A stretch of 64,000 bases of DNA, from positions 1-64,000 of IMG/VR virus record IMGVR_UViG_3300036715_000626; one strand, given 5' to 3'. The translations under genes were made by a program, and so were the position numbers. The notes beneath the pieces are model-generated. The model was not told where the DNA came from. It did no database searches and saw nothing but the letters and a program-made list of their open reading frames with translations. Position 1 is the stretch's first letter. The number at the start of each line of letters is the position of its first letter. This document shows, in pieces, positions 21,718 to 39,911 of the stretch.

Positions 21718-21762
21718 GTTATTTTTTTCTTTATTGAATAAATAATAAAAAAAGGATTACCT

Positions 21763-23097
21763 ATGCCATTGTTTACACGCGTATCGACCGAAGATTTAGA
21801 GACTGAAATTTCAGGCACTCTTACACCAGAAGATGTAGCTGATCATACCGAAGCTCATGAAGACGTTGCTTCTGAAATGGAAGAAATTCAAGGTGCGTTT
21901 ACAGCTATCGATGATGCTGAAGAAGTTAAACAAAATCTTGAAGAAAAAGTAGTTGCTCTTGAAGCACTTGCTACTATTGAACTAACTGCGTATCATGTTA
22001 ACGATGCTAAGAAAACATATAATGATGCATGTAAACGTCTTGGGTTAGATCCCGTAGCTATTTCTACGGAAGATATTGACAACGGCGTTAATTTGTCAGT
22101 AGAAGGCATGAAAGAAGTCATTACTAAAATCGTAGAAGCGATTAAAGCTATTATTGCTAAAATCGTACTTGCGGTTAAGAAACTTTATATTAAGATTCAA
22201 GTAGCATTTAACAATGATAAAAAAGTCGCTACTAAACTGATGAACGAAATTGAAGAAAAAGCTAAAAAATATAATACCCAAGATGATATGATCGTTGATC
22301 TCAAAGCGGTATTCCGACCGGATAGTGATTTGAGTAATAGTTTATATAAATCAGTCTCTGGGTTAATGACGCTATTTGATGGTGAAAAACCTTTTAGCGA
22401 TATCATCGGACACGCACTACAGGATTATAGTAGAGATTCTGGCCGAGTTATTAAAATAACAGGCGTTAATGCAGAAGGGACCGTGTTATTCGATGTTAAT
22501 CCTGTAGATGGAATTAATGGTGATGAAACTATGGCACCTTCGTGGATAGAAGAAGTAACCGATCAAAAATTATCCCATGGAATATATGGCGAAGCAATTT
22601 CTGTAAGGATTTTATCTACAAAAGCGAATATTTTTTATGCTGTGATAAAATATATACATGAAGAAACTAACCATTTCGTCTATAAAGCTCTTACTATTAA
22701 AGGTGTTCTTGGTGGTAATAAAGTATCTTCTGATTATAAAGTAACTGCGTACGGTAGTTCTGAAAAAATTACTTTTAAGATATTACCTAAAGTTGATTTA
22801 TCAGACATTAAATGGATTGGAAAACTTGTCGGAGACCTTAGTGGTAATATTGGAAAACAATATTCCGCTATGCTAGAAACACTTAAGACCCTTGATAGCG
22901 ATGTAGCTAGAACTGAAAAAGATCTGGCTAGTCTTGGAGATGATAAAGCCGCCGATGTGAAAGAAAGTTTATCTGTATTAAAAGAGATGTCAACTATCAT
23001 ACCACGTGCTTATGTGGATCGTATGTCGGCTATTTTGTATCTTAACAAAGCCTGTATTAAACTGTTAGCAGCTGCTAATCGTGGATTAAAAGGGTAA
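21763..23097 (+). CDS. Internal head protein paralog 1 (phiKZ inner-body-like)
   Basis: Acidic propeptide with VSTE, ISTE, LSVE sites, then amphipathic helix MKEVITKIVEAIKAII. Confidence 0.8.
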   Translation: MPLFTRVSTEDLETEISGTLTPEDVADHTEAHEDVASEMEEIQGAFTAIDDAEEVKQNLEEKVVALEALATIELTAYHVNDAKKTYNDACKRLGLDPVAISTEDIDNGVNLSVEGMKEVITKIVEAIKAIIAKIVLAVKKLYIKIQVAFNNDKKVATKLMNEIEEKAKKYNTQDDMIVDLKAVFRPDSDLSNSLYKSVSGLMTLFDGEKPFSDIIGHALQDYSRDSGRVIKITGVNAEGTVLFDVNPVDGINGDETMAPSWIEEVTDQKLSHGIYGEAISVRILSTKANIFYAVIKYIHEETNHFVYKALTIKGVLGGNKVSSDYKVTAYGSSEKITFKILPKVDLSDIKWIGKLVGDLSGNIGKQYSAMLETLKTLDSDVARTEKDLASLGDDKAADVKESLSVLKEMSTIIPRAYVDRMSAILYLNKACIKLLAAANRGLKG

Positions 23098-23101
23098 CCA
23101 T

Positions 23102-23130
23102 ATACATAGGTAGCGATGCTACCTATGTAT
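23102..23130 (+). terminator. Hairpin with T-tract
   Basis: ATACATAGGTAGC-GAT-GCTACCTATGTAT-TCTTTTTT. Confidence 0.75.
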
Positions 23131-23172
23131 TCTTTTTTTATTTATATGAAATTTAACCTATAGGAATATACT

Positions 23173-24552
23173 ATGCGCCACTCATTATTCGCAACTCTCA
23201 GTAGAGAAGATTTTGTTGATCCTAACACCGAAACAGACCTTACCACCATTGAACCAGAACAAGTTATCGACGATACCGAAGCTACTGATGAACTTAACGA
23301 AATCCATGCTGAAGTTAAACAAGATATCCTTACTGCTGACGATTCAGAAGAAGTAATTTATGAACTCCAAGATAAAATCGTAGAAAACGAAAAACTTCTT
23401 GAGACTCCTGAAGTTGTTTCTAGCGGATCTGTTGTTGTAGCGCAGGAATCTCTCAAACGCAGTGCTCGCATTCTAGGTGTTTCTGTTGCTGCGGTTTCTG
23501 GATTATTTCCTTCCAACGAAGCTGTTAATGAAGATCCGGTATTCGCTCTTAAGATCTCTAATGAATCGGCACGAGAGTTTATACAAGGTATCGTAGAAAA
23601 ACTTAAAGTTCTTTTTGAACGTATCAAACTCGCTATTAAGAAACTCTATACTAAGCTAGTCGTTATTACCTCGTTCGCTGAAAAGAAAGCTATCAGTCTT
23701 AAATCGGTTGTTAAAAATGTAAAAGGTACTCCTACAGATCTAACAGCACAAGATATCAAATACATTAGTAATATCCTAGGTGTTGTTATTGCAGTTAACC
23801 ATGGTAACTTTAGTGGTGATGTTTCTGGTATCGTAGGGCAATATCTGTCTACTGTAACTAATAGTAACACTATTAACAAAATGACTGCTAATACAGCAGC
23901 TGTCATCAAGTCGATCACAGATCTCAATGCTAAGCCTACTATTGATATTAAAGATATCTATACTGTAGATGATATGATCTTGAAAACATGTGATGGTAAA
24001 ACATATGCCAATGCTATGTTAGAGAAACTTACTAATAGCCTTATGGAAAACAAAATGTTTAACATTGAAGGTGATAAAACTAATAGTGCACTTGTAAGTG
24101 TAATACCTATTCGTTTTGATGGTATTACTATTGATGGTATTGGTATTATATCTAATACTAAAATTGATGTTAAAGATGCTAAAGACCTTATGACCTCTAC
24201 AAGCATACGTATCGTTAAAGCTACTTTATCTCCGGTCATTATAGATAAGTTCAGTATCCATGCTCCTACTAAGGAAGTGTTGAGTAAAGTACTTGATAAC
24301 GTTATCAATGCTTCTAAACAAACTAAGTCATTCTCTACTAACATGTTAGCTAACATTGACAAAATCGATCACGATATTAGTAAGTTATATAACTTAGAGC
24401 TTACACCAGAACTTAAAGATATTACTCGTCGCACTATTACTACAACTCGTTTAGTAGCTACCCATGCTGTATTGAACGGTGTTCTTGGTCAAGTTGCTGC
24501 GACTAAAGCAGTACTAAGTTATTGTAACCTTTGTGTTAAAAAATTCGCTTAA
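23173..24552 (+). CDS. Internal head protein paralog 2
   Basis: LSRE, AQE, PSNE, ISNE sites; similar to 38574..39911 at both termini. Confidence 0.8.
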   Translation: MRHSLFATLSREDFVDPNTETDLTTIEPEQVIDDTEATDELNEIHAEVKQDILTADDSEEVIYELQDKIVENEKLLETPEVVSSGSVVVAQESLKRSARILGVSVAAVSGLFPSNEAVNEDPVFALKISNESAREFIQGIVEKLKVLFERIKLAIKKLYTKLVVITSFAEKKAISLKSVVKNVKGTPTDLTAQDIKYISNILGVVIAVNHGNFSGDVSGIVGQYLSTVTNSNTINKMTANTAAVIKSITDLNAKPTIDIKDIYTVDDMILKTCDGKTYANAMLEKLTNSLMENKMFNIEGDKTNSALVSVIPIRFDGITIDGIGIISNTKIDVKDAKDLMTSTSIRIVKATLSPVIIDKFSIHAPTKEVLSKVLDNVINASKQTKSFSTNMLANIDKIDHDISKLYNLELTPELKDITRRTITTTRLVATHAVLNGVLGQVAATKAVLSYCNLCVKKFA

Positions 24553-24582
24553 CTACTAGCTAGGGATATCCCTAGCTAGTAG
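24553..24582. terminator. Perfect 30-bp palindrome between convergent genes
   Basis: CTACTAGCTAGGGAT|ATCCCTAGCTAGTAG. Confidence 0.75.
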
Positions 24583-26497
24583 CTTTTAATTCTTCATTTG
24601 CTTTTTGACTTAGTTCTTCCAGTGTAGGAAAATTAAACATAGACGTACAATAATCTATAGAATTTACTTTACCAAACATAAGATTAATGTTTTGTAATTT
24701 GAAATCATCTTTATCAATACCTTTAATATCAATAACTTCTCTAACAGTAGTTTCCTTACTAACATTAGCCGCTTGGGTATCTGAGGGGTACCCAGAAACC
24801 TGATCTGCATCAAAAACAAAACCTCTTACGTTAGTGATTAAATTAGGATTTTCCTCAACTACTTTCATGCCATTTTCTTTAATCCTAGAAGAAGGAAGTA
24901 ACACGATCCAATTATCTAATCCTAAAGAAACATCGCTATCTAAAGACTTAGGTTTACTACCTAATACTCTTCCACGTTCTAAATAAAAGAAATGCATAGC
25001 ATCAATTATTTTCTTAGGACCACTATTAAATATATCAAAAGAAGATACACCAGATAACATAGCCATAACATGCGAAAGGTCTTTAGTCTTCTCATCAAGA
25101 TGCAACATAGAGATAACGTCCCATTGGTTATAGATAATATACTCAAGAGGTTTATTAGCAGACATGTATCTATGCCAATCGATACCACCTAGATGCATAC
25201 CTTTCTTCTCAATAACCTGATAACTGTAATTAGTTTCATAAGATTCTAATTGAATATCGTCTTCATTAGTAAACCCACACTCGCAAACACATTCTTTATT
25301 AGTTAACAAAGTACCATAATCATCATACTCATACTTAACATGGATATCTTTACCACACTCTGGACATTTAACTCGTTCTATTTTCGTATAGGTTTTTACA
25401 TCTAACGGAACTGTTGTTGTATAATGTAAAACTATTTTAGCTTGTCCAAGTTCTTCTTTAAATTTAAGTTTACCAAGTTTATCACCAAGTTCTTTTTTAA
25501 GGATGTTATCAAGACTATACCCCCCAGGAACTGTTTTACCGCCTACACGGACATAACGGTGCGCTGACATAGCATCGACCCAGTAGAACGTAGCTGGGCA
25601 GTCTATGACGTGCCATTGCTCTTCTGGTGAAATAGGTTTAAACTTACCTGAATCCGTCATCTTACTGATAGAACCCATTTTGAATTTGAAATGTCTAAGT
25701 TCTTTAGGTAATCTAGGATCGCTAAATACATCTTTAGGGTCTATATTATGTTTCTCTAGAACATCGAGTATCATTCCGATATCGAAAGTGATATTCCATA
25801 TCGCTATGATATCAGGTTGCCATTCATGAGCTTTCTTAAGAACTTCTAAGACACATTCTAACTCATTTTCAAAAGTATGGTACTCTGTTTTAATATTTTC
25901 GGTAATAGAAGTTTTAGGAATATACTTAGTGAACAGATATTCTAGTTGACTAACAACACCTTGTCTGGATTGTATAAACTTCCTAGTAAAGACTGTATAG
26001 ATCTTATCTTTCATAGTTAGTGATATAACCGTTATCTCACCTGTTTCAATATTGATCTCGATGTCGAGAGCAGCTTCTTTGTATTCTGAAATAGTATCTG
26101 GGTATTTATCAAGATATAACTTCTTAATGGTTACTTTAGAATCAACATCTAGACCATAAACAAAAGGTGAATCTTGTACGTCTCTAAGACTTGTTTTACC
26201 GATATATCGGTTACCTAGACGCATAGCTACATTTTTACCTAACTCAGATTGAGTAGAGGTATATTTATTAAGGTTCTCGATGTATTCAGATTCTTTCTTA
26301 TCTTTATGCTGCTGTAGATGTGGCTTGGTTATCCAAAATGGTCGTTTAAAATTAGATAGTACTTTTAAATTATTTTCTTTTGTTCCATCTTTATAATGGA
26401 TAACTTCTTTTATAACATGCGTGTCCTCACGAACATCCGGTATAGCCGGTAACCAGAATATAAACTTACATTCTTTACCTAGTATTTCCTTTTGCAT
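24572..26497 (-). CDS. Split family-B DNA polymerase, exonuclease/motif-A subunit (phiKZ gp82-like)
   Basis: ExoI LDIE, ExoII WNITFD, YSLDNIL, ExoIII YNQWD, motif A DQVSGYPS, NVSKETT. Confidence 0.88.
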   Translation of the reverse strand: MQKEILGKECKFIFWLPAIPDVREDTHVIKEVIHYKDGTKENNLKVLSNFKRPFWITKPHLQQHKDKKESEYIENLNKYTSTQSELGKNVAMRLGNRYIGKTSLRDVQDSPFVYGLDVDSKVTIKKLYLDKYPDTISEYKEAALDIEINIETGEITVISLTMKDKIYTVFTRKFIQSRQGVVSQLEYLFTKYIPKTSITENIKTEYHTFENELECVLEVLKKAHEWQPDIIAIWNITFDIGMILDVLEKHNIDPKDVFSDPRLPKELRHFKFKMGSISKMTDSGKFKPISPEEQWHVIDCPATFYWVDAMSAHRYVRVGGKTVPGGYSLDNILKKELGDKLGKLKFKEELGQAKIVLHYTTTVPLDVKTYTKIERVKCPECGKDIHVKYEYDDYGTLLTNKECVCECGFTNEDDIQLESYETNYSYQVIEKKGMHLGGIDWHRYMSANKPLEYIIYNQWDVISMLHLDEKTKDLSHVMAMLSGVSSFDIFNSGPKKIIDAMHFFYLERGRVLGSKPKSLDSDVSLGLDNWIVLLPSSRIKENGMKVVEENPNLITNVRGFVFDADQVSGYPSDTQAANVSKETTVREVIDIKGIDKDDFKLQNINLMFGKVNSIDYCTSMFNFPTLEELSQKANEELKATS

Positions 26498-26574
26498 ATT
26501 TGCCCTTTATGATTATTCAGTTATAAATCTCTGTTTAAAATATTATCTTACTTGATAAAAAAAAAGGATATATT

Positions 26575-27930
26575 ATGGCACTATTTAAACGACTCTCTCG
26601 AGAAGACGTGGATCTTCTAGAAGAAGATCAAGAACCTCTAGACTTATCTCAAGTTATCGAAGATAACGATGACTTCCAAGCATCTCTAGAAGAGTATAAT
26701 GATATGTTAGAAGATCTTGATGAAGCTACTGAAGTAGCTGAAGAAGCTCAAGAGAAGGTAGAAGAACTAGAGACTCTGTCTCCAGAGGAGTACTCTCCTT
26801 ACGTAGTAAGAGACTCTATCAAGTTCTATGTTAACCTCTGTAAAAGAGTGGGTATCGAACCAGAACATATCTCTACTGAAGATATTGATAATGGCATCAA
26901 GTTATCTGTAGAGAGTATCAAAGAGACTATAATCAAAATTATAGAAGCTATCAAAGCATTCATAGCTAAAGTATGGAATGCTCTTAAGTCCCTGTTCGTA
27001 AAAGCACAAGTAGTTGTTAATAACGACGAGAAAATAGCTAAAGAGGAAACTCAAAAACTACTTGCTAAAATAAAAGAGAAAAATGTAACTCAACATGATA
27101 TAGATATGTGTCTAAAAGATACATCATTATCTATTGAAGATAACGACGATAAAATTAATAATACTAATATCTTAAAACCTATGTTAATCGAAATATCAAG
27201 ACGAATATCTGGATTCACTATGCTTCATCACAATGGATACGCTATGTTAAAAATATATGGTAAGTCCTTTCAGGAAGATAGTCTATTTAAATTAGTCCAT
27301 TTAACAGGTGATAATATAGATTTCTTTAATGGAACAGCTTCCTATGGTGCGGAACATATGATAAAATTTATACGTAACCACGAGCTAAAACTATTAAGTC
27401 ACAGTAGATTATTACCTACAGATTACGGTCACGATATTAAAACAGACCATATTATTGTGACTCCTGTTACATCCACTGGGACTAAGTTAACAATTCTTGT
27501 AAGAGTAACAAGAAAAGAAAGTGATTATGCTGGAAGAGGAACATATTCAGTAGATGATATAGAATATCTTGACTGTAAAGTTACCGATAGTTTTATATCT
27601 GATAATTGGGATACTCTTAGTGATATAAATAATTACACTATAAACACGCTAACAGATATTTCTAGAAATATAGATTTTAATAAAAATAAAATTAAAGCTA
27701 TAATGAGCATAACTAATAAGATAATAACAGAAAATGAAAAAATTCTTTCTGAAATAAATAAAGAAGCAAGCGATTATAAAAAGAAAGAAAATTTAGACTA
27801 TTATCAAAAAGTTATAAAAATACAACCTAGAATATGTTATGATATGATAAAATCTTTAATTTATCTTAATAGAACTAATCTAAAAATTATTTCATTTTTA
27901 GATAAAGTAGTAGATGTTGCTAAAAAATAA
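26575..27930 (+). CDS. Internal head protein paralog 3
   Basis: Shares CKR.G..P..ISTEDIDNG..LSVE..KE.I.KI.EAIKA.IAK with paralog 1. Confidence 0.8.
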   Translation: MALFKRLSREDVDLLEEDQEPLDLSQVIEDNDDFQASLEEYNDMLEDLDEATEVAEEAQEKVEELETLSPEEYSPYVVRDSIKFYVNLCKRVGIEPEHISTEDIDNGIKLSVESIKETIIKIIEAIKAFIAKVWNALKSLFVKAQVVVNNDEKIAKEETQKLLAKIKEKNVTQHDIDMCLKDTSLSIEDNDDKINNTNILKPMLIEISRRISGFTMLHHNGYAMLKIYGKSFQEDSLFKLVHLTGDNIDFFNGTASYGAEHMIKFIRNHELKLLSHSRLLPTDYGHDIKTDHIIVTPVTSTGTKLTILVRVTRKESDYAGRGTYSVDDIEYLDCKVTDSFISDNWDTLSDINNYTINTLTDISRNIDFNKNKIKAIMSITNKIITENEKILSEINKEASDYKKKENLDYYQKVIKIQPRICYDMIKSLIYLNRTNLKIISFLDKVVDVAKK

Positions 27931-27939
27931 CTACGCAAT

Positions 27940-27967
27940 GTATCAGATAACACATGTTATCTGATAC
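27940..27967. terminator. Hairpin
   Basis: GTATCAGATAACA-CA-TGTTATCTGATAC. Confidence 0.7.
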
Positions 27968-28025
27968 TGTATTTATATCCATTTATCTAATGTTTTAAAT
28001 TAATGATAATAACTAAGGAAATAGC

Positions 28026-29471
28026 ATGAAACTGTTTGACACTCTTGACCATAAACCGAAAACCTCTAACTCGACACTTTCTACTGAAATGATCGATATC
28101 CAAAAGAACGATTATGTGGTTCCTTTGCTAGAATCAGCTATCGGCGATCTTCGCGATAAGATGACGGAATTTAGTATCAATTCTACCAAAGAAGCTTTTA
28201 ACCATAAAACAATCTATCCAATAATTCAACGTATCGATGCTATCCTTAAAAAACGTTTTGGCTTTACTACCAGACATGTAAGTACTGATACAAGCAACTA
28301 CGCTATCTTTCCGGTTCCTCCTAAATCGTTTAACGTCCTTAATGATAATGTAGAGGAGTTATACACTAACATTTCAGAACATTTAGAAGATACTAATGTT
28401 AAAACAATTGAAGTTAAGCATGATTACCAAATCAATAACATACTTTCAGATTGGAAGCAGTCTATCGATTCATTAGAGAAAACTATGAACACTAAAGGTG
28501 TTTATATTGACTTACACCATGCTACTATTTCTGGATTACCAGATGATTATGTTCTCTATATGTTTGGAGACTTTAATTTCTTACTTAACGGTATTAACCT
28601 TTCTAATCGTGAAGTAGTGGCGGTTATGATGCATGAGATCGGTCATGGGTTTACGCATCTTGAATACAGCTATCGCTCGGTTAAAAATACGGGTGTTCTT
28701 GTGGATACTATGAAAGACAATTTGTTAAACAAAAACAAATCGTATCGTGAATCGTTAGTTCTCGCTTATGAAGAAACATTTCACGAGAAACTTACTGAAA
28801 CTGAAAAGAAAAATGCATTATCGGCTACTATAGCAGTAATGAATAAGTATGTTGCTAACAGTACCTATATGGGTGATTCAATTCACGCTTATACCGATTC
28901 GGAACAAGCAGCAGATCAGTTCTCTGGTAGATTCGGATTAGGAGCTGAGTTAGTTTCAGCGCTTAAAGCGATTACTGATAAGTACGGTAGTTTTGGTTTC
29001 TTAGCTGGACAGTTTGCATTACCATTAGTAGCAATCTTAACTTACTATGCTGTACTAGTACTTATTACAGGTGGATTAGCTGTTCTAGGTAATATAGCAA
29101 TTGTTACGATAGGTGTTATAACATTACTCAACTTGATTGTAGCTATCTTTACTAAAGGCGGTACAACTATACCTGAAACATATGATGAAAACAAGCGTAG
29201 AGCTATTCGATCTCGTAATGAGCTAGTTCGTCAATTACGTTTATCACAATTGAATAAAACTGAGCTTACTGCTATGTTAGGCCAGATAGAATTGACAGAT
29301 AAGTTAATATCTAAAATACCTGCTGATAAAGTGGGTATTTTTAATAGACTAGTTATAGCTATGTCTAAAGATGCTAAATTACACCGTGATTCTAAATACA
29401 CTGAACAACTTATCGAAGATCTTATGGAAAATGATCTTTACGTAGCTGCTGGTAAACTTAAAGCACTCTAG
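28026..29471 (+). CDS. Virion head protein with HExxH zincin motif and hydrophobic hairpin
   Basis: LSTE site; AVMMHEIGH...SEQAADQFSGRFG.G.EL.SAL; long hydrophobic segment. Confidence 0.75.
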   Translation: MKLFDTLDHKPKTSNSTLSTEMIDIQKNDYVVPLLESAIGDLRDKMTEFSINSTKEAFNHKTIYPIIQRIDAILKKRFGFTTRHVSTDTSNYAIFPVPPKSFNVLNDNVEELYTNISEHLEDTNVKTIEVKHDYQINNILSDWKQSIDSLEKTMNTKGVYIDLHHATISGLPDDYVLYMFGDFNFLLNGINLSNREVVAVMMHEIGHGFTHLEYSYRSVKNTGVLVDTMKDNLLNKNKSYRESLVLAYEETFHEKLTETEKKNALSATIAVMNKYVANSTYMGDSIHAYTDSEQAADQFSGRFGLGAELVSALKAITDKYGSFGFLAGQFALPLVAILTYYAVLVLITGGLAVLGNIAIVTIGVITLLNLIVAIFTKGGTTIPETYDENKRRAIRSRNELVRQLRLSQLNKTELTAMLGQIELTDKLISKIPADKVGIFNRLVIAMSKDAKLHRDSKYTEQLIEDLMENDLYVAAGKLKAL

Positions 29472-29517
29472 ATAGATATCGGGATTCCCGATATCTATCT
29501 ATCTATCTACCTATCTA
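29469..29517. repeat. Hairpin merging into a (TATC)n microsatellite
   Basis: TAGATAGATATCGGGA-T-TCCCGATATCTATCTA then TCTATCTACCTATCTA. Confidence 0.7.
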
Positions 29518-29546
29518 TATTATTGAATATAAAAACAGGAGTTCGT

Positions 29547-30818
29547 ATGAGAAAATTATTCGACATCAGCACAACAGGTCTTTCAATCGAAGAGTTAGAA
29601 CCACTGGTTCCGGAAGAAGGTAGCGATATCTTAGACGTAGCTGTAGACAGTAGCGATGATGAGATTGCATCTGAAAACAGCCAAATGCAAGCGACCCTTA
29701 CAGAGATCGAAACAGCTAACAACGTTGTTGAAGCTATCGATGGTATGATCGCTCAAGATAAAGCAGCTATTGAAGCTGGCGAACCAAGTGATACTTATGT
29801 TAAAATGTCTGTTGAGAACTTCCGTACCGTTCTTTCAGTTGTTGGTTTTAATGTTTCAGTACTTCAAGTCAGTTCTGAGTCATTTACAACTATGACTGCG
29901 TTACAGGTTCTTAACCTCTCTATCGAGGAAAAAGAAGAAGTTAAAAAAGGTATTCTCGGTAAAATCGGAGAAAAAGTTAAAGAAGTCGGTGAACGTTTCA
30001 TGAACACTATGCGACTTATTCGTATCGCTAACATGAATACGCTTAACGTTATTAAAGAAGTACGTTCTCGTATTGCAGCTTCTTCTAAAACACCTAGTAA
30101 GCCGATTAACAATCCTACCAAGAAAACAACTAACCGTTTGTTGTTCTCATTTGCATATCTCAATCTTAAAAAGCTTGATGATGAAAACTATATGAAACTT
30201 TGTAATGGTATCTTTGACTTTATGTTCCAAGTCGATAACATCAAAACAACCAGAGAGAACTTACAAAAACTTGTTACTGGTAACTATATCGATGTCAAGT
30301 TGGCTAGACCGGCTGCTAAAACAGATCTTGATAAAGATATCCTCGAAGCTCTTGATGAAAAACTTACCAAAAAAGGTATCGGCGAAGATAAACTTATCGG
30401 TTACTTCACTACACAATACTGGGACGTCGCTTACTTTAGTAATAAGTACATTGCACAACCTACCGGTATTTGTTTGTACAGCAAAAATCAAAAACCTACA
30501 TTCTTTAAAGGTGCTACGGGTTATCTTGAATTCAACGCTACACATTCATTTGATGCTCTTAAAGAACTTGATGATGTTGAATTACCTAGTATCGAAACGT
30601 TGACTAAAATTGTTAATCGTGTTGAGAAAGCAGTTCACGAATTCGATACTATCCTAGGAGAAATAAATGGTATTCAACGCTCTGTTAATGCTATCGGCGA
30701 CATTTCCCCAATCATCTACTTAAATATTCTTATCCAGCATTTAAGCAGTGCGCGTATGTACTACACCAAAGGTCTGCTACATATGGTCAACACTATGTTG
30801 AAACATTACAAGGCGTAA
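29547..30818 (+). CDS. Internal head protein paralog 4
   Basis: Start ATG 29547 (CAGGAG); LSIE, MSVE, VSSE, LSIE sites in the acidic propeptide. Confidence 0.75.
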   Translation: MRKLFDISTTGLSIEELEPLVPEEGSDILDVAVDSSDDEIASENSQMQATLTEIETANNVVEAIDGMIAQDKAAIEAGEPSDTYVKMSVENFRTVLSVVGFNVSVLQVSSESFTTMTALQVLNLSIEEKEEVKKGILGKIGEKVKEVGERFMNTMRLIRIANMNTLNVIKEVRSRIAASSKTPSKPINNPTKKTTNRLLFSFAYLNLKKLDDENYMKLCNGIFDFMFQVDNIKTTRENLQKLVTGNYIDVKLARPAAKTDLDKDILEALDEKLTKKGIGEDKLIGYFTTQYWDVAYFSNKYIAQPTGICLYSKNQKPTFFKGATGYLEFNATHSFDALKELDDVELPSIETLTKIVNRVEKAVHEFDTILGEINGIQRSVNAIGDISPIIYLNILIQHLSSARMYYTKGLLHMVNTMLKHYKA

Positions 30819-30828
30819 TTCACGTTAT

Positions 30829-30855
30829 ACACTACCTACCACTGGTAGGTAGTGT
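30829..30855. terminator. Hairpin
   Basis: ACACTACCTACCA-C-TGGTAGGTAGTGT. Confidence 0.7.
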
Positions 30856-30900
30856 TAGCTTTATTACTAATTCTTTGATAAATACCTATAAGGAAATACC

Positions 30901-31353: not shown

Positions 31354-31355
31354 AT

Positions 31356-32291
31356 ATGTTACCTAAAAATGAACCTAGTTTGGATAAAACCAAACTTGCA
31401 GACCACAACATCATAACAAGACTAAAAGATTTTAACGAACAGATCACCGCTAGTGGTGTAGTATCTAGAGAAGATATTTTATCTCTTGAGGAATTTATCG
31501 GGGCAAGCATTATTACTGCTAAATCGCCTATCAATCTCTTTACCGCTACTAAATCTAGTATCGGTCTAAATGTAGTACGTGAAGTTGTTGAATGTGAACT
31601 AGCTGGATCTATCTCAGCTGGTAAAATCACCTATAACGATCTGTATGTAGTTACATCTGAAGTATATGGTAAACTTGATCACATACTTAAGCACCTTGTA
31701 TACCTTAAAAGCGTACCTTCTGAAATTATGGCTCGTTTTCTTAATGAAAAATATATTTGGTCATATGTAAACGAACATGGTATCGAAGGTAATGATATGA
31801 TAGACATAAGTAGTACTCTTCCTGTAATGAGTCTATTCCTGTATCGTAATGATTACCTTAGCGGGATTACTAGCATGATTGATACCTCTAATAGAACATT
31901 TGATAACATTAAACATTTAGCAAATGATTTATTACTTAAACATACTAATGAAGTAAGTACTGATTATACTCCATTGTTATCAGCGATTTACAGTAAATCT
32001 CTTTGGAAACTATTCTATAATGAAGCATATACCTTAGATATCATTACGGTTAGAAATATCGTAGAGATCTATAACGATATCGATTCGGTTATCGAACATT
32101 TTAATGGATTCATCGGAATGGTTAAAACAGACTATGATGATTTAACTGCTAACTACAGTGAATATATGTATAATGATAATAAATGGTTAATGCGTACATA
32201 TAACCATTATCGTAACATAGCGTCAGTTATCAACGATGAAGTGTCAGAAACGATTCTCGATATCCTCAAACAGTTTAAACAAGAATACTAA
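31356..32291 (+). CDS. Hypothetical protein, probably head protein
   Basis: 311 aa; GVVSREDILSLE..N.FT...S..GL pattern like phiKZ-type head proteins. Confidence 0.65.
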   Translation: MLPKNEPSLDKTKLADHNIITRLKDFNEQITASGVVSREDILSLEEFIGASIITAKSPINLFTATKSSIGLNVVREVVECELAGSISAGKITYNDLYVVTSEVYGKLDHILKHLVYLKSVPSEIMARFLNEKYIWSYVNEHGIEGNDMIDISSTLPVMSLFLYRNDYLSGITSMIDTSNRTFDNIKHLANDLLLKHTNEVSTDYTPLLSAIYSKSLWKLFYNEAYTLDIITVRNIVEIYNDIDSVIEHFNGFIGMVKTDYDDLTANYSEYMYNDNKWLMRTYNHYRNIASVINDEVSETILDILKQFKQEY

Positions 32292-32293
32292 AT

Positions 32294-32327
32294 ACATATA
32301 CTACTGGGGTACCCCAGTAGTATATGT
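32294..32327. terminator. Perfect 34-bp palindrome between convergent genes
   Basis: ACATATACTACTGGGGT|ACCCCAGTAGTATATGT. Confidence 0.75.
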
Positions 32328-35182: not shown

Positions 35183-35245
35183 AGTATTCCTTTATTTATT
35201 TTTTATACTAACACGATATTCCGTCTAATGGTTACCTTGTCTTAA

Positions 35246-36319
35246 TTAGTTCATAATGTTTTTATACGTCTGACTGTCAGATCTAACATACCACTCTAAC
35301 TGAAGATATTTTGGATTGATATACGGATATCCTCGGTTATTGAATAATGATAATAACTCAAGCGGTATCTCTACCATATTACCACTGTATGGTTTACCAT
35401 TAGCCTTAGCATTAACAAGGTCCCGCATATCCTTATTGAAGATACCGGTAGTTCGATTGAACTCGTCAATTAGTATATCATCATTGTACATAGCACCCAT
35501 GCATTTGAAACGAATGTTGATATCTTTGTTCTGGTCGTTATAGTTCTGAGAATCTGAAAAGTCAAACATTCTACCGGTAGGAACATTCACTGGAAAACTC
35601 GCACCAGTGGCAGCTATCTTTTTAACGAAACGTTTAGACTCATCTAGTATAACTCGGTAGATACGAGTGTTGTAATCAATTTCATTTTCACGTATCATAT
35701 CTAAATAAGGCGACATCATACCTTCAAATACTTCTGATATATATTTAACCCATGTTTCCATCATTAACACGATTGGCTCGTCACGAACATTTCTAAACGT
35801 ACAGTCCATATCAAACGCATCTAAAACTTCAGTATAACCATCTCCAATAGACCACTGCTGTCCTCTGACACCTTGTTTAGAAGTAAAGGTTGGTAATACT
35901 ATGTCTGGCCATCCAGACATGTTCTTGATAGTGTTTGTTAGAATTGGAATAAACGCCATTTCGTTATCCACCAATAATGATCTAATTGGTTTTGTATCAT
36001 GGGTATATAATCTAGGATCTAACATATTACGTACGTACATATGAATACTTTGTTTATTACTAGAGAGCAATGAATACATTGTTCGGATATTACGTATATT
36101 AACAGTAGTCAGGTTTAACTGTGGTCTTGTAAAAAATGCTAACCCGAAACTATCTTTATTATCTTGGATCATAGGTTTAATAGTTTGATGGTTAATACCG
36201 TATAGATTATTCGATAGAGCTTTATCTAAACTACCTATATACTGGGTTTTAGCGAAAAAATCATCTAATGATTCTATCTTCGACAGATCGTATGTATCTG
36301 ATTTACCATTTAGCGCCAT
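35246..36319 (-). CDS. Virion structural protein (phiKZ gp88-like)
   Basis: YGINH, GLAFFTRPQLNL, FIPILTN, SGWPD, EIDYNTRIYR. Start set at ATG 36319. Confidence 0.8.
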   Translation of the reverse strand: MALNGKSDTYDLSKIESLDDFFAKTQYIGSLDKALSNNLYGINHQTIKPMIQDNKDSFGLAFFTRPQLNLTTVNIRNIRTMYSLLSSNKQSIHMYVRNMLDPRLYTHDTKPIRSLLVDNEMAFIPILTNTIKNMSGWPDIVLPTFTSKQGVRGQQWSIGDGYTEVLDAFDMDCTFRNVRDEPIVLMMETWVKYISEVFEGMMSPYLDMIRENEIDYNTRIYRVILDESKRFVKKIAATGASFPVNVPTGRMFDFSDSQNYNDQNKDINIRFKCMGAMYNDDILIDEFNRTTGIFNKDMRDLVNAKANGKPYSGNMVEIPLELLSLFNNRGYPYINPKYLQLEWYVRSDSQTYKNIMN

Positions 36320-36400
36320 AAAAAATCCTCTTATAATTATCTTAATCAAAGATATCTATCAATATTAATGATTATATTACGATAAAAGGGGAATACTAAG

Positions 36401-37606
36401 ATGGGAATTATGGCCGGCTTAGGATTAATAAAAACAATTTTAGATGTCAAACGCGATTTAGATAGTTCAACCCCTCCAGGAGAAGTAGCTAAACGTATAA
36501 ACGAAGCTACTAAACATATAGGTCTGGTGATGACAGATGGTTCTATTACAAAACTTGTAAGCCAAACAATTATCGAACCTATTGCTATCGTTAGTAAAGA
36601 CTTACGTCAAGAAGATATCATTCAGAAAGTACTTGAACTTAATACGGATATCTTTACTGGTTTCTATATGCAAGCATATGAAATTCTTAAAAATCTTTAT
36701 GGGGTAAACTCACAAACGGTTGTAAAGTTGCTTGGTACTGATAACAGTTCTTTAGTAGGGCTGTTGGTAACAAAAGGTGGCGGGTATATCGCTGGTAAAG
36801 CAGTTCCTTCTGCAGAGGAACTCATGACTGAAGAATTTGATTTCTTCTCTGATTTACAAAATGGTCTTAAGTTTACTATGTCTATAGAAGCTAAAGGTGA
36901 CAACGATAATAACATGAAAACGTCACGACCTTCTTTAGACTCTAAAAGTACTTCAGATGATAACCTATCTGGTATACTTCAGCGTCAAGTTGAGCTGGTT
37001 ATTGATGTTGGTAGTGATGGCGATACCCATAAAATAATTCTACCTATGACTATCAAAACGCATGTCATCTTTACCGATGTTGACAGCATTATTCGTTTAC
37101 TAACTCCAAATGCTTATGATAAATCATTTGGGTATCGTTTAGACGAGTATCGTTCTGGCGCTATCTCTTTAACAGATCTTGTATTTGCCACTGATTTGAT
37201 TAAAGAGTATAAACAAAATAAACTTGCTGATAAAGATGGTTTAATTACCTTGTTAAACAGACGTACTGAATCCGGCAACAGTAAGATGGTCGCCACTAAA
37301 GGTATTGCTGGTTTTGAAAAGAATTACAACATGTTTGTAATCACAGCCTACGATCAAGTTAAAATTGAAAAACAATTACATGGTAAACTCGCTAACGAAG
37401 TTTACAAACAAAAGTTCTTGGAACAAGGCGGCGGGTTACTTGTAACAATCATCGATCAAGACCATGAGCGTATTCTTATGTATACCCGTGACATACGCGG
37501 AACATCAGATCTTTCATTTAGAGCATTACAAAAACGTAATGCTAAATCAAATGACTTTGAAGAGATTATCAAAGCCATTCTTACAAACAGACCACCCGTT
37601 TTTTAA
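36401..37606 (+). CDS. Virion head protein (phiKZ gp89-like)
   Basis: IEPIAIV, MSIE site, RSGAIS..DLVF..DLIKEY. Confidence 0.7.
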   Translation: MGIMAGLGLIKTILDVKRDLDSSTPPGEVAKRINEATKHIGLVMTDGSITKLVSQTIIEPIAIVSKDLRQEDIIQKVLELNTDIFTGFYMQAYEILKNLYGVNSQTVVKLLGTDNSSLVGLLVTKGGGYIAGKAVPSAEELMTEEFDFFSDLQNGLKFTMSIEAKGDNDNNMKTSRPSLDSKSTSDDNLSGILQRQVELVIDVGSDGDTHKIILPMTIKTHVIFTDVDSIIRLLTPNAYDKSFGYRLDEYRSGAISLTDLVFATDLIKEYKQNKLADKDGLITLLNRRTESGNSKMVATKGIAGFEKNYNMFVITAYDQVKIEKQLHGKLANEVYKQKFLEQGGGLLVTIIDQDHERILMYTRDIRGTSDLSFRALQKRNAKSNDFEEIIKAILTNRPPVF

Positions 37607-37621
37607 TATAAAGGAATAAAC

Positions 37622-38497
37622 ATGTTTAACGTTAACGGCATTCTAACATACATTAAAAATATGTTTCACACAGTAAATAAAGATGATGTTCTTAAAACAG
37701 CTGAGTTTGTATTTACCAATCTAAACAAAGATGTTATTCCTGCGATAGACGAGATGATTGCTAATGGTGATATCAAAGCTATCAAGGATAGTAACATACT
37801 TAACCTAGTTGCTATCAACTCTGGTCTTAAGTTTAAAGATAACAAAGACTTCTTGATTAAACTAAAAGCAGTATTGGTAAGCATTAACTCTACATATAAA
37901 CTATTCGTAGATACTATTCAAAATGAGCTTAGTGAAGTTATTACCGATACTGCCGCTTCTCCAAAAGATGCTGCGATTCTTAAGATCCTTAATGATATCG
38001 GCGGTATGAATATATTTATTCTTGATCTTTCATACTACATTATTATGGAAAAAGATTCTGGCGGTATGTCTAAGAAAAAGATCGCTATGATCCAAGAGAC
38101 GGCTTACGATTTTGCTATCAGTGTCAAAGCTTATAGTGTTAATTTTGAGAAGCTTATTAAAGACTTACCTAAGGTATCTAACACTACTATCAATATTAGT
38201 GATGGTAAAGATAGTATGTTACAGAGCTTGATCGCGCATACTGGGATATCTTTATCGTTACCTTTTACGAAAGGTTTTGTAAATAACCCTATTTACCATA
38301 TCCGTATGTGGATGGTGGATCGAGAGATCGCTAAATACGAATCTCTAAAAGAGCGTAAGAAACTTATCGAACTTCGTTTGATGGAACTTAAGCTTGAAGA
38401 AGAAGGGCAAGCCGATCCTAAACTTCGAAAACAGATTGAGTATTACGAGGAACGTCTTAGTAAGCTTGATTATGAAATCGATAAACTTGAAAAATAG
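37622..38497 (+). CDS. Virion head protein (phiKZ gp90-like)
   Basis: GFVNNPIYHIRM and C-terminal coiled coil ELRL...DPKL.KQIEYY. Confidence 0.75.
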   Translation: MFNVNGILTYIKNMFHTVNKDDVLKTAEFVFTNLNKDVIPAIDEMIANGDIKAIKDSNILNLVAINSGLKFKDNKDFLIKLKAVLVSINSTYKLFVDTIQNELSEVITDTAASPKDAAILKILNDIGGMNIFILDLSYYIIMEKDSGGMSKKKIAMIQETAYDFAISVKAYSVNFEKLIKDLPKVSNTTINISDGKDSMLQSLIAHTGISLSLPFTKGFVNNPIYHIRMWMVDREIAKYESLKERKKLIELRLMELKLEEEGQADPKLRKQIEYYEERLSKLDYEIDKLEK

Positions 38498-38573
38498 CGG
38501 CGTTTACTAACCGCACGCACGGTTAGTTATTTTTTGCAAAAAATAAACCAAAACAAAAAAACGGAGAATTACC

Positions 38574-39911
38574 ATGGCACGACCAACATTATTCGGATCA
38601 CTTTCGGCAGAAGACCTAGATTCAGAAATCGGCGGAGTAGGTGAAGCACCTGCGATTGACGTAGAAGACGCACTTGAAGGCGATGAAGCGGCTGATGAAG
38701 CAGCTGAAATCACTGCTGAAATTCAACAAGACCAAGCATCTATGGAAGATGCAATGGAAGTTGCTGAAGAACTCGAAGAAAAAGTTGAAGAGAATGAAGC
38801 TCTTCTCGAAAAACCAGAAGAAATCACTGAGACGGCAGTTGTCGTAGCTCAAGAGTCTTTGAAAACTGCTATGCGTCTTCTTGGTGCTCCTTCTGATATG
38901 ATCACGGTTCCATCTATGGAAGCGGTTAAAGAAAACCCAGCATCTTCACTTCGTTTGTCTAATGAAAGTATGAAAGAGTTCGTTGTTAAAATCGCTGAAA
39001 CCATCAAAGCAATCTTTGCTAAAATTATCAACTCGATCAAAAAACTTTGGACCAAACTTGTTGTCGTTACTAACAGATCTACCAAGCTTGCTGTTGCAAT
39101 GCGCGCCGGTCTTAAAAACTACGATGACAAAGATGCCAAATTTGACGAAGCAGCTGTAAAAGCAGCTATCGGTAAAATCGGTGTTGTTGCATTCGCTAAC
39201 GGCGGATCACTTGAAGGTGGTGCTATTGTTACCGCTATCAATGAGTACTTGAAAGAAACTACCGATGTGGCTGCGGTTAAAAAATACGCTACTTCTCTTG
39301 CTGGTATGCACAAAGATATCGAAGGTTTTATCACTTCTGGTAAAGCTATTACCGAACAGGGTCTTGTTGATTCACTCATAGGCGTATTCAAACCAAATGG
39401 TAAACTTGCTTCTGTTCTCGGAGAACATATTGCTAAAGGTGTGAAAGATTTAGCCGCACTACCAGTTAAATTTAATGGTACTTCTATTAAGTATATAAAA
39501 TTCTCTGGATTTGACAGTTTGAAAACACTTTCTATCGGAACAGGTTCATATAGCCTTTCTAAAGAAGAGCAAGCTGGTCTTAAAATCGGTTGCGCGTCTG
39601 CTAAAGATGTTGCTATTATCCTTAACGGTGTTAAGAAAGCCAGTGATTCTTCAAAAGGCTATGCTGATGAAGCTATTAAACTTCTTAATACTGAAACTTC
39701 GTTCATCGATACTGTCGCTAAGAAAGGATTCTCTTCTGATGATGCTGAACTCCGTATCGCTGTTACTAAATCGCTTAACGCATGTAAAACAATTGCTACT
39801 ACTGCTGCTCTCGATGGTATCCTCGGTCAAGTTGCTGCAACTAAAGACGTTCTCGGATACTGCGGTGTCTGTATGAAAGCTTATACTAAAAAAGGCGCGA
39901 AAGCTGCTTAA
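38574..39911 (+). CDS. Internal head protein paralog 5, likely abundant
   Basis: LSAE, AQE, PSME, LSNE sites; CGGAG RBS; strongly biased codons (GCT, GAA, ATC). Confidence 0.8.
   Translation: MARPTLFGSLSAEDLDSEIGGVGEAPAIDVEDALEGDEAADEAAEITAEIQQDQASMEDAMEVAEELEEKVEENEALLEKPEEITETAVVVAQESLKTAMRLLGAPSDMITVPSMEAVKENPASSLRLSNESMKEFVVKIAETIKAIFAKIINSIKKLWTKLVVVTNRSTKLAVAMRAGLKNYDDKDAKFDEAAVKAAIGKIGVVAFANGGSLEGGAIVTAINEYLKETTDVAAVKKYATSLAGMHKDIEGFITSGKAITEQGLVDSLIGVFKPNGKLASVLGEHIAKGVKDLAALPVKFNGTSIKYIKFSGFDSLKTLSIGTGSYSLSKEEQAGLKIGCASAKDVAIILNGVKKASDSSKGYADEAIKLLNTETSFIDTVAKKGFSSDDAELRIAVTKSLNACKTIATTAALDGILGQVAATKDVLGYCGVCMKAYTKKGAKAA

What the first reader, a model, noticed from the sequence alone, without database searches (positions are those of the whole stretch)
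21763..39911. Shared N-terminal LF...S-x-E tag on six head proteins: candidate capsid-targeting signal
Seen: MPLFTRVSTED (21763), MRHSLFATLSRED (23173), MALFKRLSRED (26575), MKLFD..TLSTEM (28026), MRKLFD..GLSIEE (29547), MARPTLFGSLSAED (38574). Established: the phiKZ prohead protease cuts after S/A/G-x-E. Inference: the invariant Leu-Phe before the first cut site, present even on the otherwise unrelated HExxH protein, is a packaging address comparable to the T4 capsid targeting sequence.
Basis: partly seen in the sequence, partly recalled or inferred. Interest (0 to 1): 0.6.

Follow-up and report, generated by a model that had tools for sequence, protein, structure and literature searches.

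The report
Capsid-address tag on jumbo-phage proteins
Seven proteins of a phiKZ-like giant phage, from three unrelated families, start with the same short Leu/Ile-Phe...Ser-x-Glu peptide, which the head protease very probably removes and which most likely loads them into the head like the T4 capsid targeting sequence; this has been suggested for related phages but never tested.

Summary
All six N-termini read as reported. A seventh, MGIFDRLSAEE, lies outside the window at genome 101156. The core pattern [LI]F-x2-3-[LVM][SA]xE[DE] occurs five times in the six-frame translation of the whole 205-kb genome, each time at residues 3-6 of a long ORF.

The genome is a distant phiKZ relative with chimallin and an S80 prohead protease. 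The six proteins are not independent. Four are PF12699 internal-head-protein paralogs, and a fifth (29547) shares their propeptide layout. Independent carriers are the HExxH protein, which is the ortholog of SPN3US gp45 (20-residue propeptide shown by mass spectrometry), and a 155-aa GNAT-fold protein.

In 38 HExxH homologs the [LI]F dipeptide persists while its distance to the invariant cleavage Glu varies from 9 to 24 residues. That favours a separate anchor over a protease subsite. The tags are predicted disordered, and selection acts on the protein rather than the DNA.

Ali et al. 2017 already called the identical N-termini of SPN3US gp53/gp54 reminiscent of T4 CTSs. phiKZ carries its own version (...SLE). 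I read this as a lineage variant of a suspected address. Its function is untested, and LF is not invariant in relatives.

The parts
21763..23097 (+). PF12699 internal-head-protein paralog, 444 aa. Tag is residues 1-10, MPLFTRVSTE|D (nt 21763-21792). An acidic propeptide with several candidate cut sites follows, up to about LSVE-114.
   Evidence: PF12699 E 1.3e-7, above gathering score. Paralogy holds with the first 25 aa removed. Ortholog in L002 starts MALFKQVSLED. Charge and site density.
23173..24552 (+). PF12699-family paralog, 459 aa. Tag is residues 1-12, MRHSLFATLSRE|D (nt 23173-23208).
   Evidence: blastp to 38574 gives E 6e-45 without the tag. L002 ortholog (72% id) starts MRKSLFTTLSSED, keeping L, F, S, E and D while the other positions change.
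26575..27930 (+). PF12699 paralog, 451 aa. Tag is residues 1-10, MALFKRLSRE|D (nt 26575-26604).
   Evidence: PF12699 E 1.5e-8. PHROG 'internal head protein'. Paralog of 21763, E 1e-36.
28026..29471 (+). HExxH (HEIGH-203) head protein with two predicted membrane helices, 481 aa. It is the ortholog of phiKZ gp84 and SPN3US gp45. Tag is residues 1-21: MKLFDTL anchor, a linker, then LSTE-21|MIDIQ (nt 28026-28088).
   Evidence: tblastn to phiKZ gp84 and SPN3US gp45. phrog_2767 E 1e-46. E21 and Q26 are invariant in 35 homologs. Residues 1-20 have pLDDT below 50. SPN3US gp45 is cut at ASE-20|SIGFQ (PMC5694885).
29547..30818 (+). Divergent PF12699-like protein, 423 aa, with no family hit of its own. 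Tag is residues 1-15, MRKLFDISTTGLSIE|E (nt 29547-29591).
   Evidence: No Pfam or PHROG hit. Ortholog in L003 (47% id) starts MALFKRLATED. The N-region is weakly similar to a PF12699 propeptide, E 1e-5. It shares the acidic region and the internal LSIE-127 site.
38574..39911 (+). PF12699 paralog, 445 aa. Tag is residues 1-13, MARPTLFGSLSAE|D (nt 38574-38612).
   Evidence: PF12699 E 1.5e-11. L003 ortholog starts MVRNGLFARMSRED.
55131..55868 (-). Ambiguous extra candidate, 245 aa, MDDIFDMLESDE. It has IF at residues 4-5 and SDE at 10-12, but P4 is acidic.
   Evidence: Ortholog in L006 (39% id) starts MDDLFDILDGNE. No link to a virion protein was shown.
40456..42054 (+). Ambiguous variant, phiKZ gp98 homolog, MIKTNLGLYSVEE (LY followed by SVE-12).
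   Evidence: L004 counterpart starts MIAAKIDLYGMEN. phiKZ gp98 is not annotated as structural.

Best explanation
The tag is a short, disordered N-terminal propeptide with two parts. The first is a hydrophobic anchor near the N-terminus, [LI]-F-x(1-2)-hydrophobic. The second is the first site for the phage's S80 (phiKZ gp175-type) prohead protease, [LVMI]-[SA]-x-E|[DE].

In the compact form the third hydrophobic residue of the anchor doubles as P4 of the cut site. The consensus is phi-F-x-R-L-S-x-E|D, 10-13 residues long. In the HExxH protein and in 29547 the two parts are separated by a linker.

I infer that the anchor binds something in the assembling prohead core and so recruits the protein, as the T4 CTS does. 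After shell closure the protease would cut after the Glu and release the cargo.

Five carriers (PF12699-like inner-body or ejection proteins) continue with a strongly acidic propeptide of about 115-130 residues that holds many further cut sites. Two carriers have only the short tag: the HExxH membrane protein and a GNAT-fold acetyltransferase at genome 101156. These two are predicted packaged, possibly injected, enzymes.

Shown: the motif, its exclusivity to N-termini, its conservation, its presence on unrelated folds, and the presence of the protease. Shown in relatives only: cleavage at the homologous sites. Inferred: the targeting function, the receptor, and packaging of the GNAT.
For: 1. 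Exclusivity. All five occurrences of the core pattern in the six-frame genome are at ORF starts. The N-terminal similarity clique is unmatched in 200 shuffles.

2. Three unrelated carrier families. PF12699. The HExxH gp84/gp45 ortholog. A GNAT fold: AF2 pLDDT 88, with the listed top Foldseek PDB hits GNAT-type acetyl/acyl-transferases at E from 2e-6.

3. Position-specific selection. In 14 compact tags from three phages, P8 is L/I in 14/14, P7 is F in 13/14, P5 is R in 10/14, P3 is S in 13/14 and P1 is E in 14/14. P6 and P2 vary freely. Orthologs at about 77% nt identity change only the non-motif positions. Leu, Phe and Ser codons differ between copies, including TCN versus AGT for Ser, so this is not DNA-level copying.

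4. The anchor is separable from the cut site. Of 38 HExxH homologs, 24 have [LI]F in the first 9 residues, against 18/197 background proteins. The distance from F to P1 Glu ranges 9-24. All 7 tags carry phi-F-x(1-2)-phi, against 14/197 in the background; 21/38 HExxH homologs carry it, Fisher p 4e-11. The conserved internal site of the PF12699 proteins ([LI]S.E at residues 113-131) has no LF upstream.

5. Cleavage is plausible. The S80 protease is present. SPN3US gp45 is cut at the aligned ASE-20, and phiKZ gp93 at SLE-13 (PMC5694885, PMC10052503).

6. The tags are predicted disordered extensions that end at the cut site.

7. Shell and portal proteins, and the cleaved-type gp89 homolog, lack the tag. 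It is therefore not needed for cleavage in general.

8. phiKZ shows an equivalent tag, phi-x-S-[LI]-E, in the first 22 residues of 7 proteins against 2.7 expected. Six of the seven are annotated structural.

9. The layout parallels T4 MKTYQEFIAE, with targeting residues 4 and 7 and processing residues 8 and 10.
Against: - There is no virion proteome, cleavage map or packaging experiment for this phage or its close relatives.
- Five of the seven carriers are related by descent, so only three independent acquisitions support portability.
- In the compact class LF sits at a fixed P8-P7. For those proteins a protease exosite reading is equally compatible.
- LF is replaced in relatives (LM, LY, FL, FF), and 11 of 38 HExxH homologs lack a clear phi-F.
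- In SPN3US and phiKZ the long propeptides, not a 10-mer, are what the literature suspects of targeting.
- The GNAT gene follows a non-structural-type gene (DUF7484, phiKZ gp42-like), so its virion status is uncertain.
- No receptor was identified. The one complex prediction gave no answer.
Confidence: 0.5

Rival explanations
1. The Leu-Phe is an extended recognition element (P8-P7 or an exosite contact) that makes the first cut by the S80 protease efficient. Incorporation into the head would be driven by other parts of the proteins.
For: In the 14 compact tags LF sits at a fixed distance from the scissile bond. P4 hydrophobic and P3 Ser preferences already show that recognition reaches beyond S/A/G-x-E. 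SPN3US shows a P4 preference too (PMC10052503).
Against: In the HExxH family the distance from F to Glu varies 9-24 residues. The conserved internal [LI]S.E sites of the same proteins have no LF upstream. MCP, portal and the gp89 homolog, whose relatives are cleaved, lack LF.
Confidence: 0.2
2. The targeting or scaffolding element is the long acidic propeptide. The N-terminal 10-mer has another role, such as chaperone or membrane contact, keeping cargo inactive, or simply capping a propeptide that must be shredded for clearance.
For: Five carriers have a region from residue 11 to about 130 with net charge -20 to -28. It holds 3-5 [LIVM][SAG]xE sites per 100 aa, against 0.25 in the proteome. 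The SPN3US literature attributes targeting to long propeptides, from the gp47 truncation result (PMC5694885).
Against: The HExxH and GNAT proteins have no long propeptide, and the short tag is the only element all seven share. The tag is better conserved than the start of the acidic region.
Confidence: 0.15
3. The tag is an inherited leftover of gene duplication within PF12699, with chance look-alikes on the other proteins and no function of its own.
For: Four carriers, probably five, are paralogs.
Against: The paralogs share only about 30% identity overall, yet six tag positions are invariant while their codons differ. The tag recurs on two unrelated folds and is conserved in their homologs. 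Shuffle tests exclude chance.
Confidence: 0.1
4. The pattern is an mRNA or translation-initiation constraint (U/A-rich early codons), not a protein signal.
For: TerL (MILFK) and the tail sheath (MGLFN) also start with LF. [LI]F in the first 9 residues is about twice the dipeptide expectation in the background: 18/197 against 4.6%.
Against: Synonymous codons vary freely within the tag: TTG, TTA, CTA and CTG for Leu, TCN and AGT for Ser. The downstream [LVM]SxE[DE] part is absent from TerL and the sheath. The full pattern occurs only on these proteins.
Confidence: 0.03

Closest known systems
T4 capsid targeting sequence (CTS) of IPI, IPII, IPIII and Alt
   Same: Both are N-terminal propeptides of about 10-20 residues. 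Aromatic or hydrophobic residues lie in the first half and the prohead-protease site in the second half. T4 IPIII and IPII start MKTYQEFIAE, with residues 4 and 7 for targeting and 8 and 10 for processing (PMC9026906). Both are shared by otherwise dissimilar internal proteins, including an enzyme (Alt in T4, a GNAT here). The CTS is removed after assembly.
   Different: There is no sequence similarity. The protease motif is [SA]-x-E with hydrophobic P4, not L/I-x-E. Five carriers continue with a long acidic multi-cut propeptide that the T4 IPs lack. The receptor is unknown, since no gp22-type scaffold has been identified in phiKZ-like phages. Necessity and sufficiency are untested here.
N-termini of SPN3US gp53/gp54 and phiKZ gp93 (PF12699 ejection or inner-body proteins)
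   Same: Same protein family and same position. SPN3US gp53 and gp54 share an identical first 15 residues, MANFVKSKLARESVE, with AxE-12 and SxE-15. phiKZ gp93 is cut at SLE-13. Ali et al. 2017 called this conservation reminiscent of T4 CTSs (PMC5694885).
   Different: That report covers two paralogs only. It does not separate an anchor from the cut site or extend the tag to unrelated proteins. The residues differ: NF...LARE and LL...LSLE against LF-x-R-LS-x-E.
SPN3US gp45 short propeptide
   Same: It is the ortholog of the HExxH protein at 28026. Mass spectrometry shows removal of a 20-residue N-terminal propeptide, and Ali et al. note it as the only SPN3US propeptide of CTS-like length (PMC5694885, PMC10052503). 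ASE-20|SIGFQ aligns with LSTE-21|MIDIQ here.
   Different: SPN3US gp45 starts MGHWQKH and has no LF. No link to the PF12699 N-termini was drawn.
Encapsulin cargo-loading peptides (comparison from my own knowledge, not tested here)
   Same: Short terminal peptides address unrelated enzymes to the interior of an HK97-fold shell.
   Different: They are usually C-terminal, are not cleaved, and bind the shell protein directly.

Membership tests
PF12699 phiKZ-like internal head proteins | Match to the Pfam model above its gathering score | tested here: met
   21763 (31.6 bits), 26575 (34.7) and 38574 (44.6) against a cut-off of 27. 23173 has no direct hit but matches 38574 by blastp at E 6e-45.
PF12699 phiKZ-like internal head proteins | Membership of 29547 | tested here: inconclusive
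   No Pfam or PHROG hit. Only a weak similarity of the propeptide region (E 1e-5) and a shared layout with an internal LSIE-127 site.
Substrates of the S80 (phiKZ gp175-type) prohead protease | The genome encodes the protease | tested here: met
   Genome 92426-93208(-): PF20034 E 1.2e-57, phrog_3014 E 7e-64, 36% identity to phiKZ gp175.
Substrates of the S80 (phiKZ gp175-type) prohead protease | An S/A/G-x-E motif at the proposed site, homologous to a proven site | tested here: met
   All seven tags end in [SA]-x-E. The HExxH site aligns with the mass-spectrometry-proven SPN3US gp45 ASE-20. The P1 Glu is invariant in 35 homologs.
Substrates of the S80 (phiKZ gp175-type) prohead protease | Actual cleavage in virions | not testable with these tools
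   Needs virion mass spectrometry or an in vitro protease assay.
T4-type capsid targeting sequence (functional class) | Short N-terminal peptide ending at a prohead-protease site and shared by unrelated internal proteins | tested here: met
   Tags of 10-21 residues on three unrelated folds. Predicted disordered.
T4-type capsid targeting sequence (functional class) | Necessary and sufficient for incorporation of cargo into the prohead | not testable with these tools
   Needs fusion and mutation experiments. None were found in the literature for any phiKZ-like phage.
T4-type capsid targeting sequence (functional class) | Sequence homology to the T4 CTS | tested here: not met
   MKTYQEFIAE against MALFKRLSRE. 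Only the layout is alike. This is an analogue, not a family member.
Chimalliviridae (nucleus-forming phiKZ-like phages) | Chimallin, split multisubunit RNAPs, a PhuZ-like tubulin and phiKZ-type head genes | tested here: met
   Chimallin PF25677 E 5e-10 and phrog_4795 E 2.5e-39. vRNAP, nvRNAP, PhuZ, MCP, portal and TerL homologs found by tblastn to phiKZ.
GNAT acetyltransferases (the seventh carrier) | GNAT fold with an R/Q-x-x-G-x-G/A acetyl-CoA motif | tested here: met
   AF2 pLDDT 88 and pTM 0.82. The listed top Foldseek PDB hits are GNAT-type acetyl/acyl-transferases (E from 2e-6, TM 0.6-0.7). The RKKGRG motif is invariant in 5 homologs. No Pfam hit. Activity not tested.

The most novel reading that the evidence does not exclude
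A two-part, portable capsid address marks the set of proteins loaded into the head of a whole clade of mostly uncultivated nucleus-forming jumbo phages. It consists of a phi-F-x-x-phi anchor and the first protease site, with a linker of variable length. Reading this tag from sequence alone would reveal the packaged, probably injected, cargo. Here that cargo includes a GNAT acetyltransferase and a membrane HExxH protein, analogous to T4 Alt. The tag would also give a handle for loading foreign proteins into jumbo-phage heads. Tags of unrelated proteins look more alike within a genome than between genomes: MKLFD/N on three proteins in L008, and M[SA]LFKR[LV] on two in L003. That would indicate co-evolution with one shared receptor.
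Probability: 0.35. Interest if true: 0.7.

Novelty: new variant of a known kind. Interest (0 to 1): 0.55.

Why it matters
How the roughly 50 head proteins of phiKZ-like phages are sorted into the prohead is an open question. No scaffold protein and no targeting signal have been demonstrated.

This tag is short, easy to recognise and sits on unrelated proteins, so it gives a directly testable candidate signal. The tests would be a 10-21-residue fusion, two point mutations, and a P1 Glu-to-Asp change to separate targeting from cleavage.

If it works, it predicts injected effectors from sequence in uncultivated jumbo phages. It would also offer a way to package reporters or enzymes into their heads, as the CTS does in T4.

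If it is only a protease determinant, it still refines the cleavage logo of this lineage to [LIVM]-[SA]-x-E|[DE]. The maturation sites of its inner-body proteins would then lie near residues 113-131.

Tried and rejected
The word-index protein search found only one relative for 26575, but 37 for the HExxH protein and 4 for the GNAT.

2. Complex prediction was run on the positional counterpart of phiKZ gp177 / SPN3US gp243 (genome 93969-95291) with residues 1-40 of 26575. SPN3US gp243 is needed for gp53/gp54 incorporation. The verdict was no answer, score 0.00. This is no evidence either way. Homology of that gene to gp177/gp243 rests only on position and phrog_3841.

3. Pairwise N-terminal scores alone do not exceed the shuffled maxima, because hydrophobic leaders score high. 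Only the clique analysis is informative.

4. The Foldseek PDB search with the HExxH model gave no significant match. The best relevant hint is ZMPSTE24, probability 0.41. I call it an HExxH protein, not a proven peptidase.

5. I considered and rejected extra carriers. 12368 (MDNIFLD...LALE, phiKZ gp66-like) and genome 169138 (signal-peptide-like) fit only the loose regex. 19468 (MTNTLLTIAGSE) is not conserved in L002.

6. Thomas et al. 2010, 2012 and 2013 (PMC2871425, PMC3323674, PMC3719823) are not held. What they say about phiKZ and 201phi2-1 N-termini is known here only through later papers.

7. The sigma-70-type promoter scan is uninformative: 71 hits against 86 expected.

8. The large representative protein search, the read tools and alternative genetic codes were not needed and not used.

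Full report
**What the window is.** The window is the first 64 kb of a single 205,015-bp contig with 34.8% G+C. It is a distant phiKZ relative. The DNA polymerase at 24572-26497(-) is 33% identical to phiKZ gp82. Local tblastn against the phiKZ genome finds TerL, a PhuZ-like tubulin, MCP, portal, sheath, tube, virion and non-virion RNAP subunits, and gp84, 87, 88, 89, 98, 99, 175 and 176 homologs. Chimallin (PF25677; phrog 'nuclear shell protein', E 2.5e-39) and an S80 prohead protease (PF20034, E 1.2e-57) are present at genome 69924-71786(-) and 92426-93208(-). The finding's block, 21763-39911, is the counterpart of the phiKZ gp80-gp97 and SPN3US gp45-gp54 head-gene region. As in those phages, a DNA polymerase gene interrupts it.

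**The observation.** All six N-termini read exactly as reported. Each starts at an ATG behind a ribosome-binding site. I called 204 genes and listed every N-terminus. A seventh carrier appeared outside the window: genome 101156-101623, 155 aa, MGIFDRLSAEE.

The compact pattern [LI]F.{2,3}[LVM][SA].E[DE] occurs five times in the 64,102-residue proteome and five times in the whole six-frame translation. All five are at residues 3-6 of long ORFs. Because that regex was written after seeing the data, I added a regex-free test. In an all-against-all comparison of residues 2-16, four proteins form a clique at score 26 or more: three PF12699 paralogs and the unrelated 155-aa protein. None of 200 composition-preserving shuffles reached a clique of four. 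In 159 kb of related phage DNA, 7 of 10 hits of a slightly relaxed pattern are at starts of long ORFs, and the other 3 lie in ORFs of 10-28 codons. The looser form that covers 28026 and 29547 is about 13-fold enriched at N-termini, with 9 observed against about 0.7 expected. Two of those nine are probably false.

**Who carries the tag.** 21763, 26575 and 38574 match PF12699 (phiKZ-like internal head proteins) above the gathering score. With the first 25 residues removed, 21763, 23173, 26575 and 38574 still find each other, with E from 1e-3 down to 1e-45.

29547 has no family hit. Its ortholog in a related contig (L003, 47% id) starts MALFKRLATED. Its N-region is weakly similar to a PF12699 propeptide. 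In a joint alignment it shares the whole layout: tag, acidic stretch, a conserved D/E-A-x-E-V helix, and an internal [LI]S.E site. So five carriers belong to one superfamily.

The second family is the HExxH protein at 28026 (HEIGH-203, two predicted membrane helices). It is the ortholog of phiKZ gp84 and SPN3US gp45.

The third is the 155-aa protein. It has no Pfam hit, but its AlphaFold model (pLDDT 88) matches GNAT acetyltransferases throughout the top of the PDB hit list. It also has an invariant RKKGRG motif.

MCP, portal, the four vRNAP subunits and the gp89, gp99, gp176, gp32 and gp52 homologs have no such tag.

**Anatomy.** In 14 compact tags (this phage, L002, L003 and the GNAT homologs) the positions are:
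- P8: L or I in 14/14
- P7: F in 13/14
- P5: R in 10/14
- P4: L, V, M or I in 14/14
- P3: S in 13/14
- P1: E in 14/14
- P1': D or E in 13/14
- P6 and P2: free

All seven carriers share [LI]F-x(1-2)-hydrophobic, against 14/197 other proteins. In the compact form the third hydrophobic residue is also P4 of the cut site. In 28026 the anchor (MKLFDTL) and the site (LSTE-21) are 14 residues apart. In 29547 they are 7 apart.

The five PF12699-like proteins continue with a region from residue 11 to about 130 with net charge -20 to -28. It carries 3-5 [LIVM][SAG]xE sites per 100 aa, against 0.25 in the proteome. The last sites, at 113, 114, 127, 131 and 131, coincide with the conserved internal site. 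They also match the positions of the SPN3US gp53/gp54 maturation cuts at residues 124-137 (PMC5694885, PMC10052503). The mature parts are neutral to basic.

AlphaFold gives pLDDT below 50 for residues 1-20 of the HExxH protein and residues 1-6 of the GNAT. The folded domains start just after the proposed cuts.

**Conservation.** The closest relative (L002, about 77% nt identity) has MALFKQVSLED and MRKSLFTTLSSED. L, F, S, E and D are kept and the other positions are changed. Within this genome the Leu (TTG, TTA, CTA, CTG), Phe (TTT, TTC) and Ser (TCG, TCT, TCA, AGT) codons differ between copies. The similarity is therefore maintained at the protein level and not by DNA exchange.

In 38 HExxH homologs (25-54% id), 24 have [LI]F in the first 9 residues, against 18/197 in the background. 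The P1 Glu and the Gln five residues later are invariant. The distance from F to Glu ranges from 9 to 24. Four of five GNAT homologs keep the full tag, and F4 is invariant.

Other related contigs show variants: MAKGLFGRLSIED, MVRNGLFARMSRED, MRNGLMTRLSIET, MAKNLYGFSREEE, MSFLSNLKLAREED, MKLFDEIGNEE. The dipeptide is therefore hydrophobic-aromatic rather than strictly Leu-Phe.

In L008 the HExxH protein and two PF12699-like proteins all begin MKLF[DN]. In L003 the HExxH protein and a PF12699-like protein begin M[SA]LFKR[VL], again with different codons. This hints at co-evolution within a genome, but the sample is small.

**Link to experimentally studied phages.** The phiKZ protease cuts after S/A/G-x-E and the SPN3US protease after A-x-E (PMC5694885). 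SPN3US gp45 loses a 20-residue propeptide. Its sequence MGHW...AVASE|SIGFQ aligns with ...TLSTE|MIDIQ here. phiKZ gp93 is cut at SLE-13 (cited in PMC5694885).

phiKZ has its own tag. Phi-x-S-[LI]-E lies within the first 22 residues of gp93, 94, 95, 97, 162, 184 and 209. That is 7 proteins against 2.7 expected, and six are annotated structural. gp153 has KSISLE-14.

Ali et al. [quoted passage not shown] They inferred a targeting role for the gp47 propeptide from a truncation mutant. No paper I could find tests a short tag in any phiKZ-like phage.

T4 IPIII and IPII start MKTYQEFIAE. Residues 4 and 7 are needed for targeting and residues 8 and 10 for processing (PMC9026906). That is the same layout as M-A-L-F-K-R-L-S-R-E.

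**Interpretation.** It is highly likely (about 0.8) that the tag is a propeptide removed by the S80 protease. The best reading (about 0.5) is that its hydrophobic-aromatic anchor is a capsid address in the T4-CTS sense. Three points favour it:
- The anchor is the only element shared by all seven carriers.
- It is separable from the cut site in one family.
- It is missing from shell proteins and from cleaved-type proteins that assemble structurally.

The main rival (0.2) is that LF is an extended protease determinant. For the compact class this cannot be excluded. Other rivals are a different role alongside a targeting acidic propeptide (0.15), a functionless relic of paralogy (0.1), and an mRNA constraint (0.03).

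The receptor is unknown. A complex prediction with the positional gp177/gp243 counterpart gave no answer.

**Novelty.** I rate this a lineage-specific variant of a suspected, untested signal. Three things go beyond the literature: the split into anchor plus cut site, the extension across three folds, and the prediction of a packaged GNAT enzyme.

The read tools were not used.

Noticed in passing
genome 101156-101623 (+), outside the window (L015:9156-9623): A 155-aa GNAT-fold protein carries the tag MGIFDRLSAEE. It has no Pfam hit and only four homologs in the large protein collection, all from related phage contigs. If packaged, it would be an injected acetyltransferase, comparable to T4 Alt or to the host-takeover GNAT Rac of phage LUZ19.
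   Followed up: yes
window 21420-21449, 21686-21718, 23102-23130, 24553-24582, 27940-27967, 30829-30855, 32294-32327, 39921-39956: Long perfect hairpins (12-16 bp stems, 3-5 nt loops) follow almost every gene of the head block. The terminator-like count is 28, against 7.7 +/- 2.5 in shuffles. Several are palindromes readable on both strands between convergent genes.
   Followed up: no
window about 29495-29525: A tetranucleotide repeat, CTATCTATCTATCTATCTACCTATCTAT, lies directly upstream of the 29547 ribosome site.
   Followed up: no
window 28026-29471: The HExxH head protein has invariant H203, E204 and H207, further invariant acidic residues (E293, D297), and two long hydrophobic helices (about residues 321-375). 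The AF2 model is confident (pLDDT 81) but has no significant PDB match. There is only a weak hint to the M48 protease ZMPSTE24. A virion-borne, membrane-inserting metallopeptidase-like protein conserved across phiKZ-like phages appears to be uncharacterised.
   Followed up: partly
window 55131-55868 (-): A 245-aa protein starts MDDIFDMLESDE, and its L006 ortholog starts MDDLFDILDGNE. Both have IF or LF at residues 4-5 and [SG]xE at 10-12, but with acidic P4. It lies beside the vRNAP gp80 homolog. It may be a further tag variant or a coincidence.
   Followed up: partly
window 40456-42054 (+): The phiKZ gp98 homolog starts MIKTNLGLYSVEE, and its L004 counterpart starts MIAAKIDLYGMEN. This Leu-Tyr plus [SG]xE-12 form resembles the LY variant of the tag seen on a PF12699 protein in L004.
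   Followed up: no
genome 92426-93208 (-), outside the window; L018:1754-2533: The prohead protease itself begins MGQIIFSSIK (relative: MGQPIIFTAIK). This is a conserved IF-x-x-I with no nearby SxE, lying ahead of the start of the S80 Pfam model. The gp90 and gp52 homologs also start with MF-type hydrophobic N-termini.
   Followed up: partly
window 52322-52633 (-) and 53425-55059 (-): Two ORFs have tandem peptide repeats: MKEETK four times followed by MKEESE units, and a Thr/Ala/Val/Asp-rich repeat (TTAVDTTATDTSAVDTTAT).
   Followed up: no
L003, L004 and window/genome 63738-65075: HNH-type endonuclease genes sit at different places inside the otherwise syntenic head and replication blocks of the related contigs. 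In L003 they split the DNA polymerase region. This suggests mobile endonuclease insertions.
   Followed up: no
L008:10001, 19381, 21113; L003:10001, 13230: Within a single related genome, tags of unrelated proteins are nearly identical: MKLFD/N on three proteins in L008, and M[SA]LFKR[VL] on two in L003. Their codons differ. This hints that tags co-evolve within a genome.
   Followed up: partly
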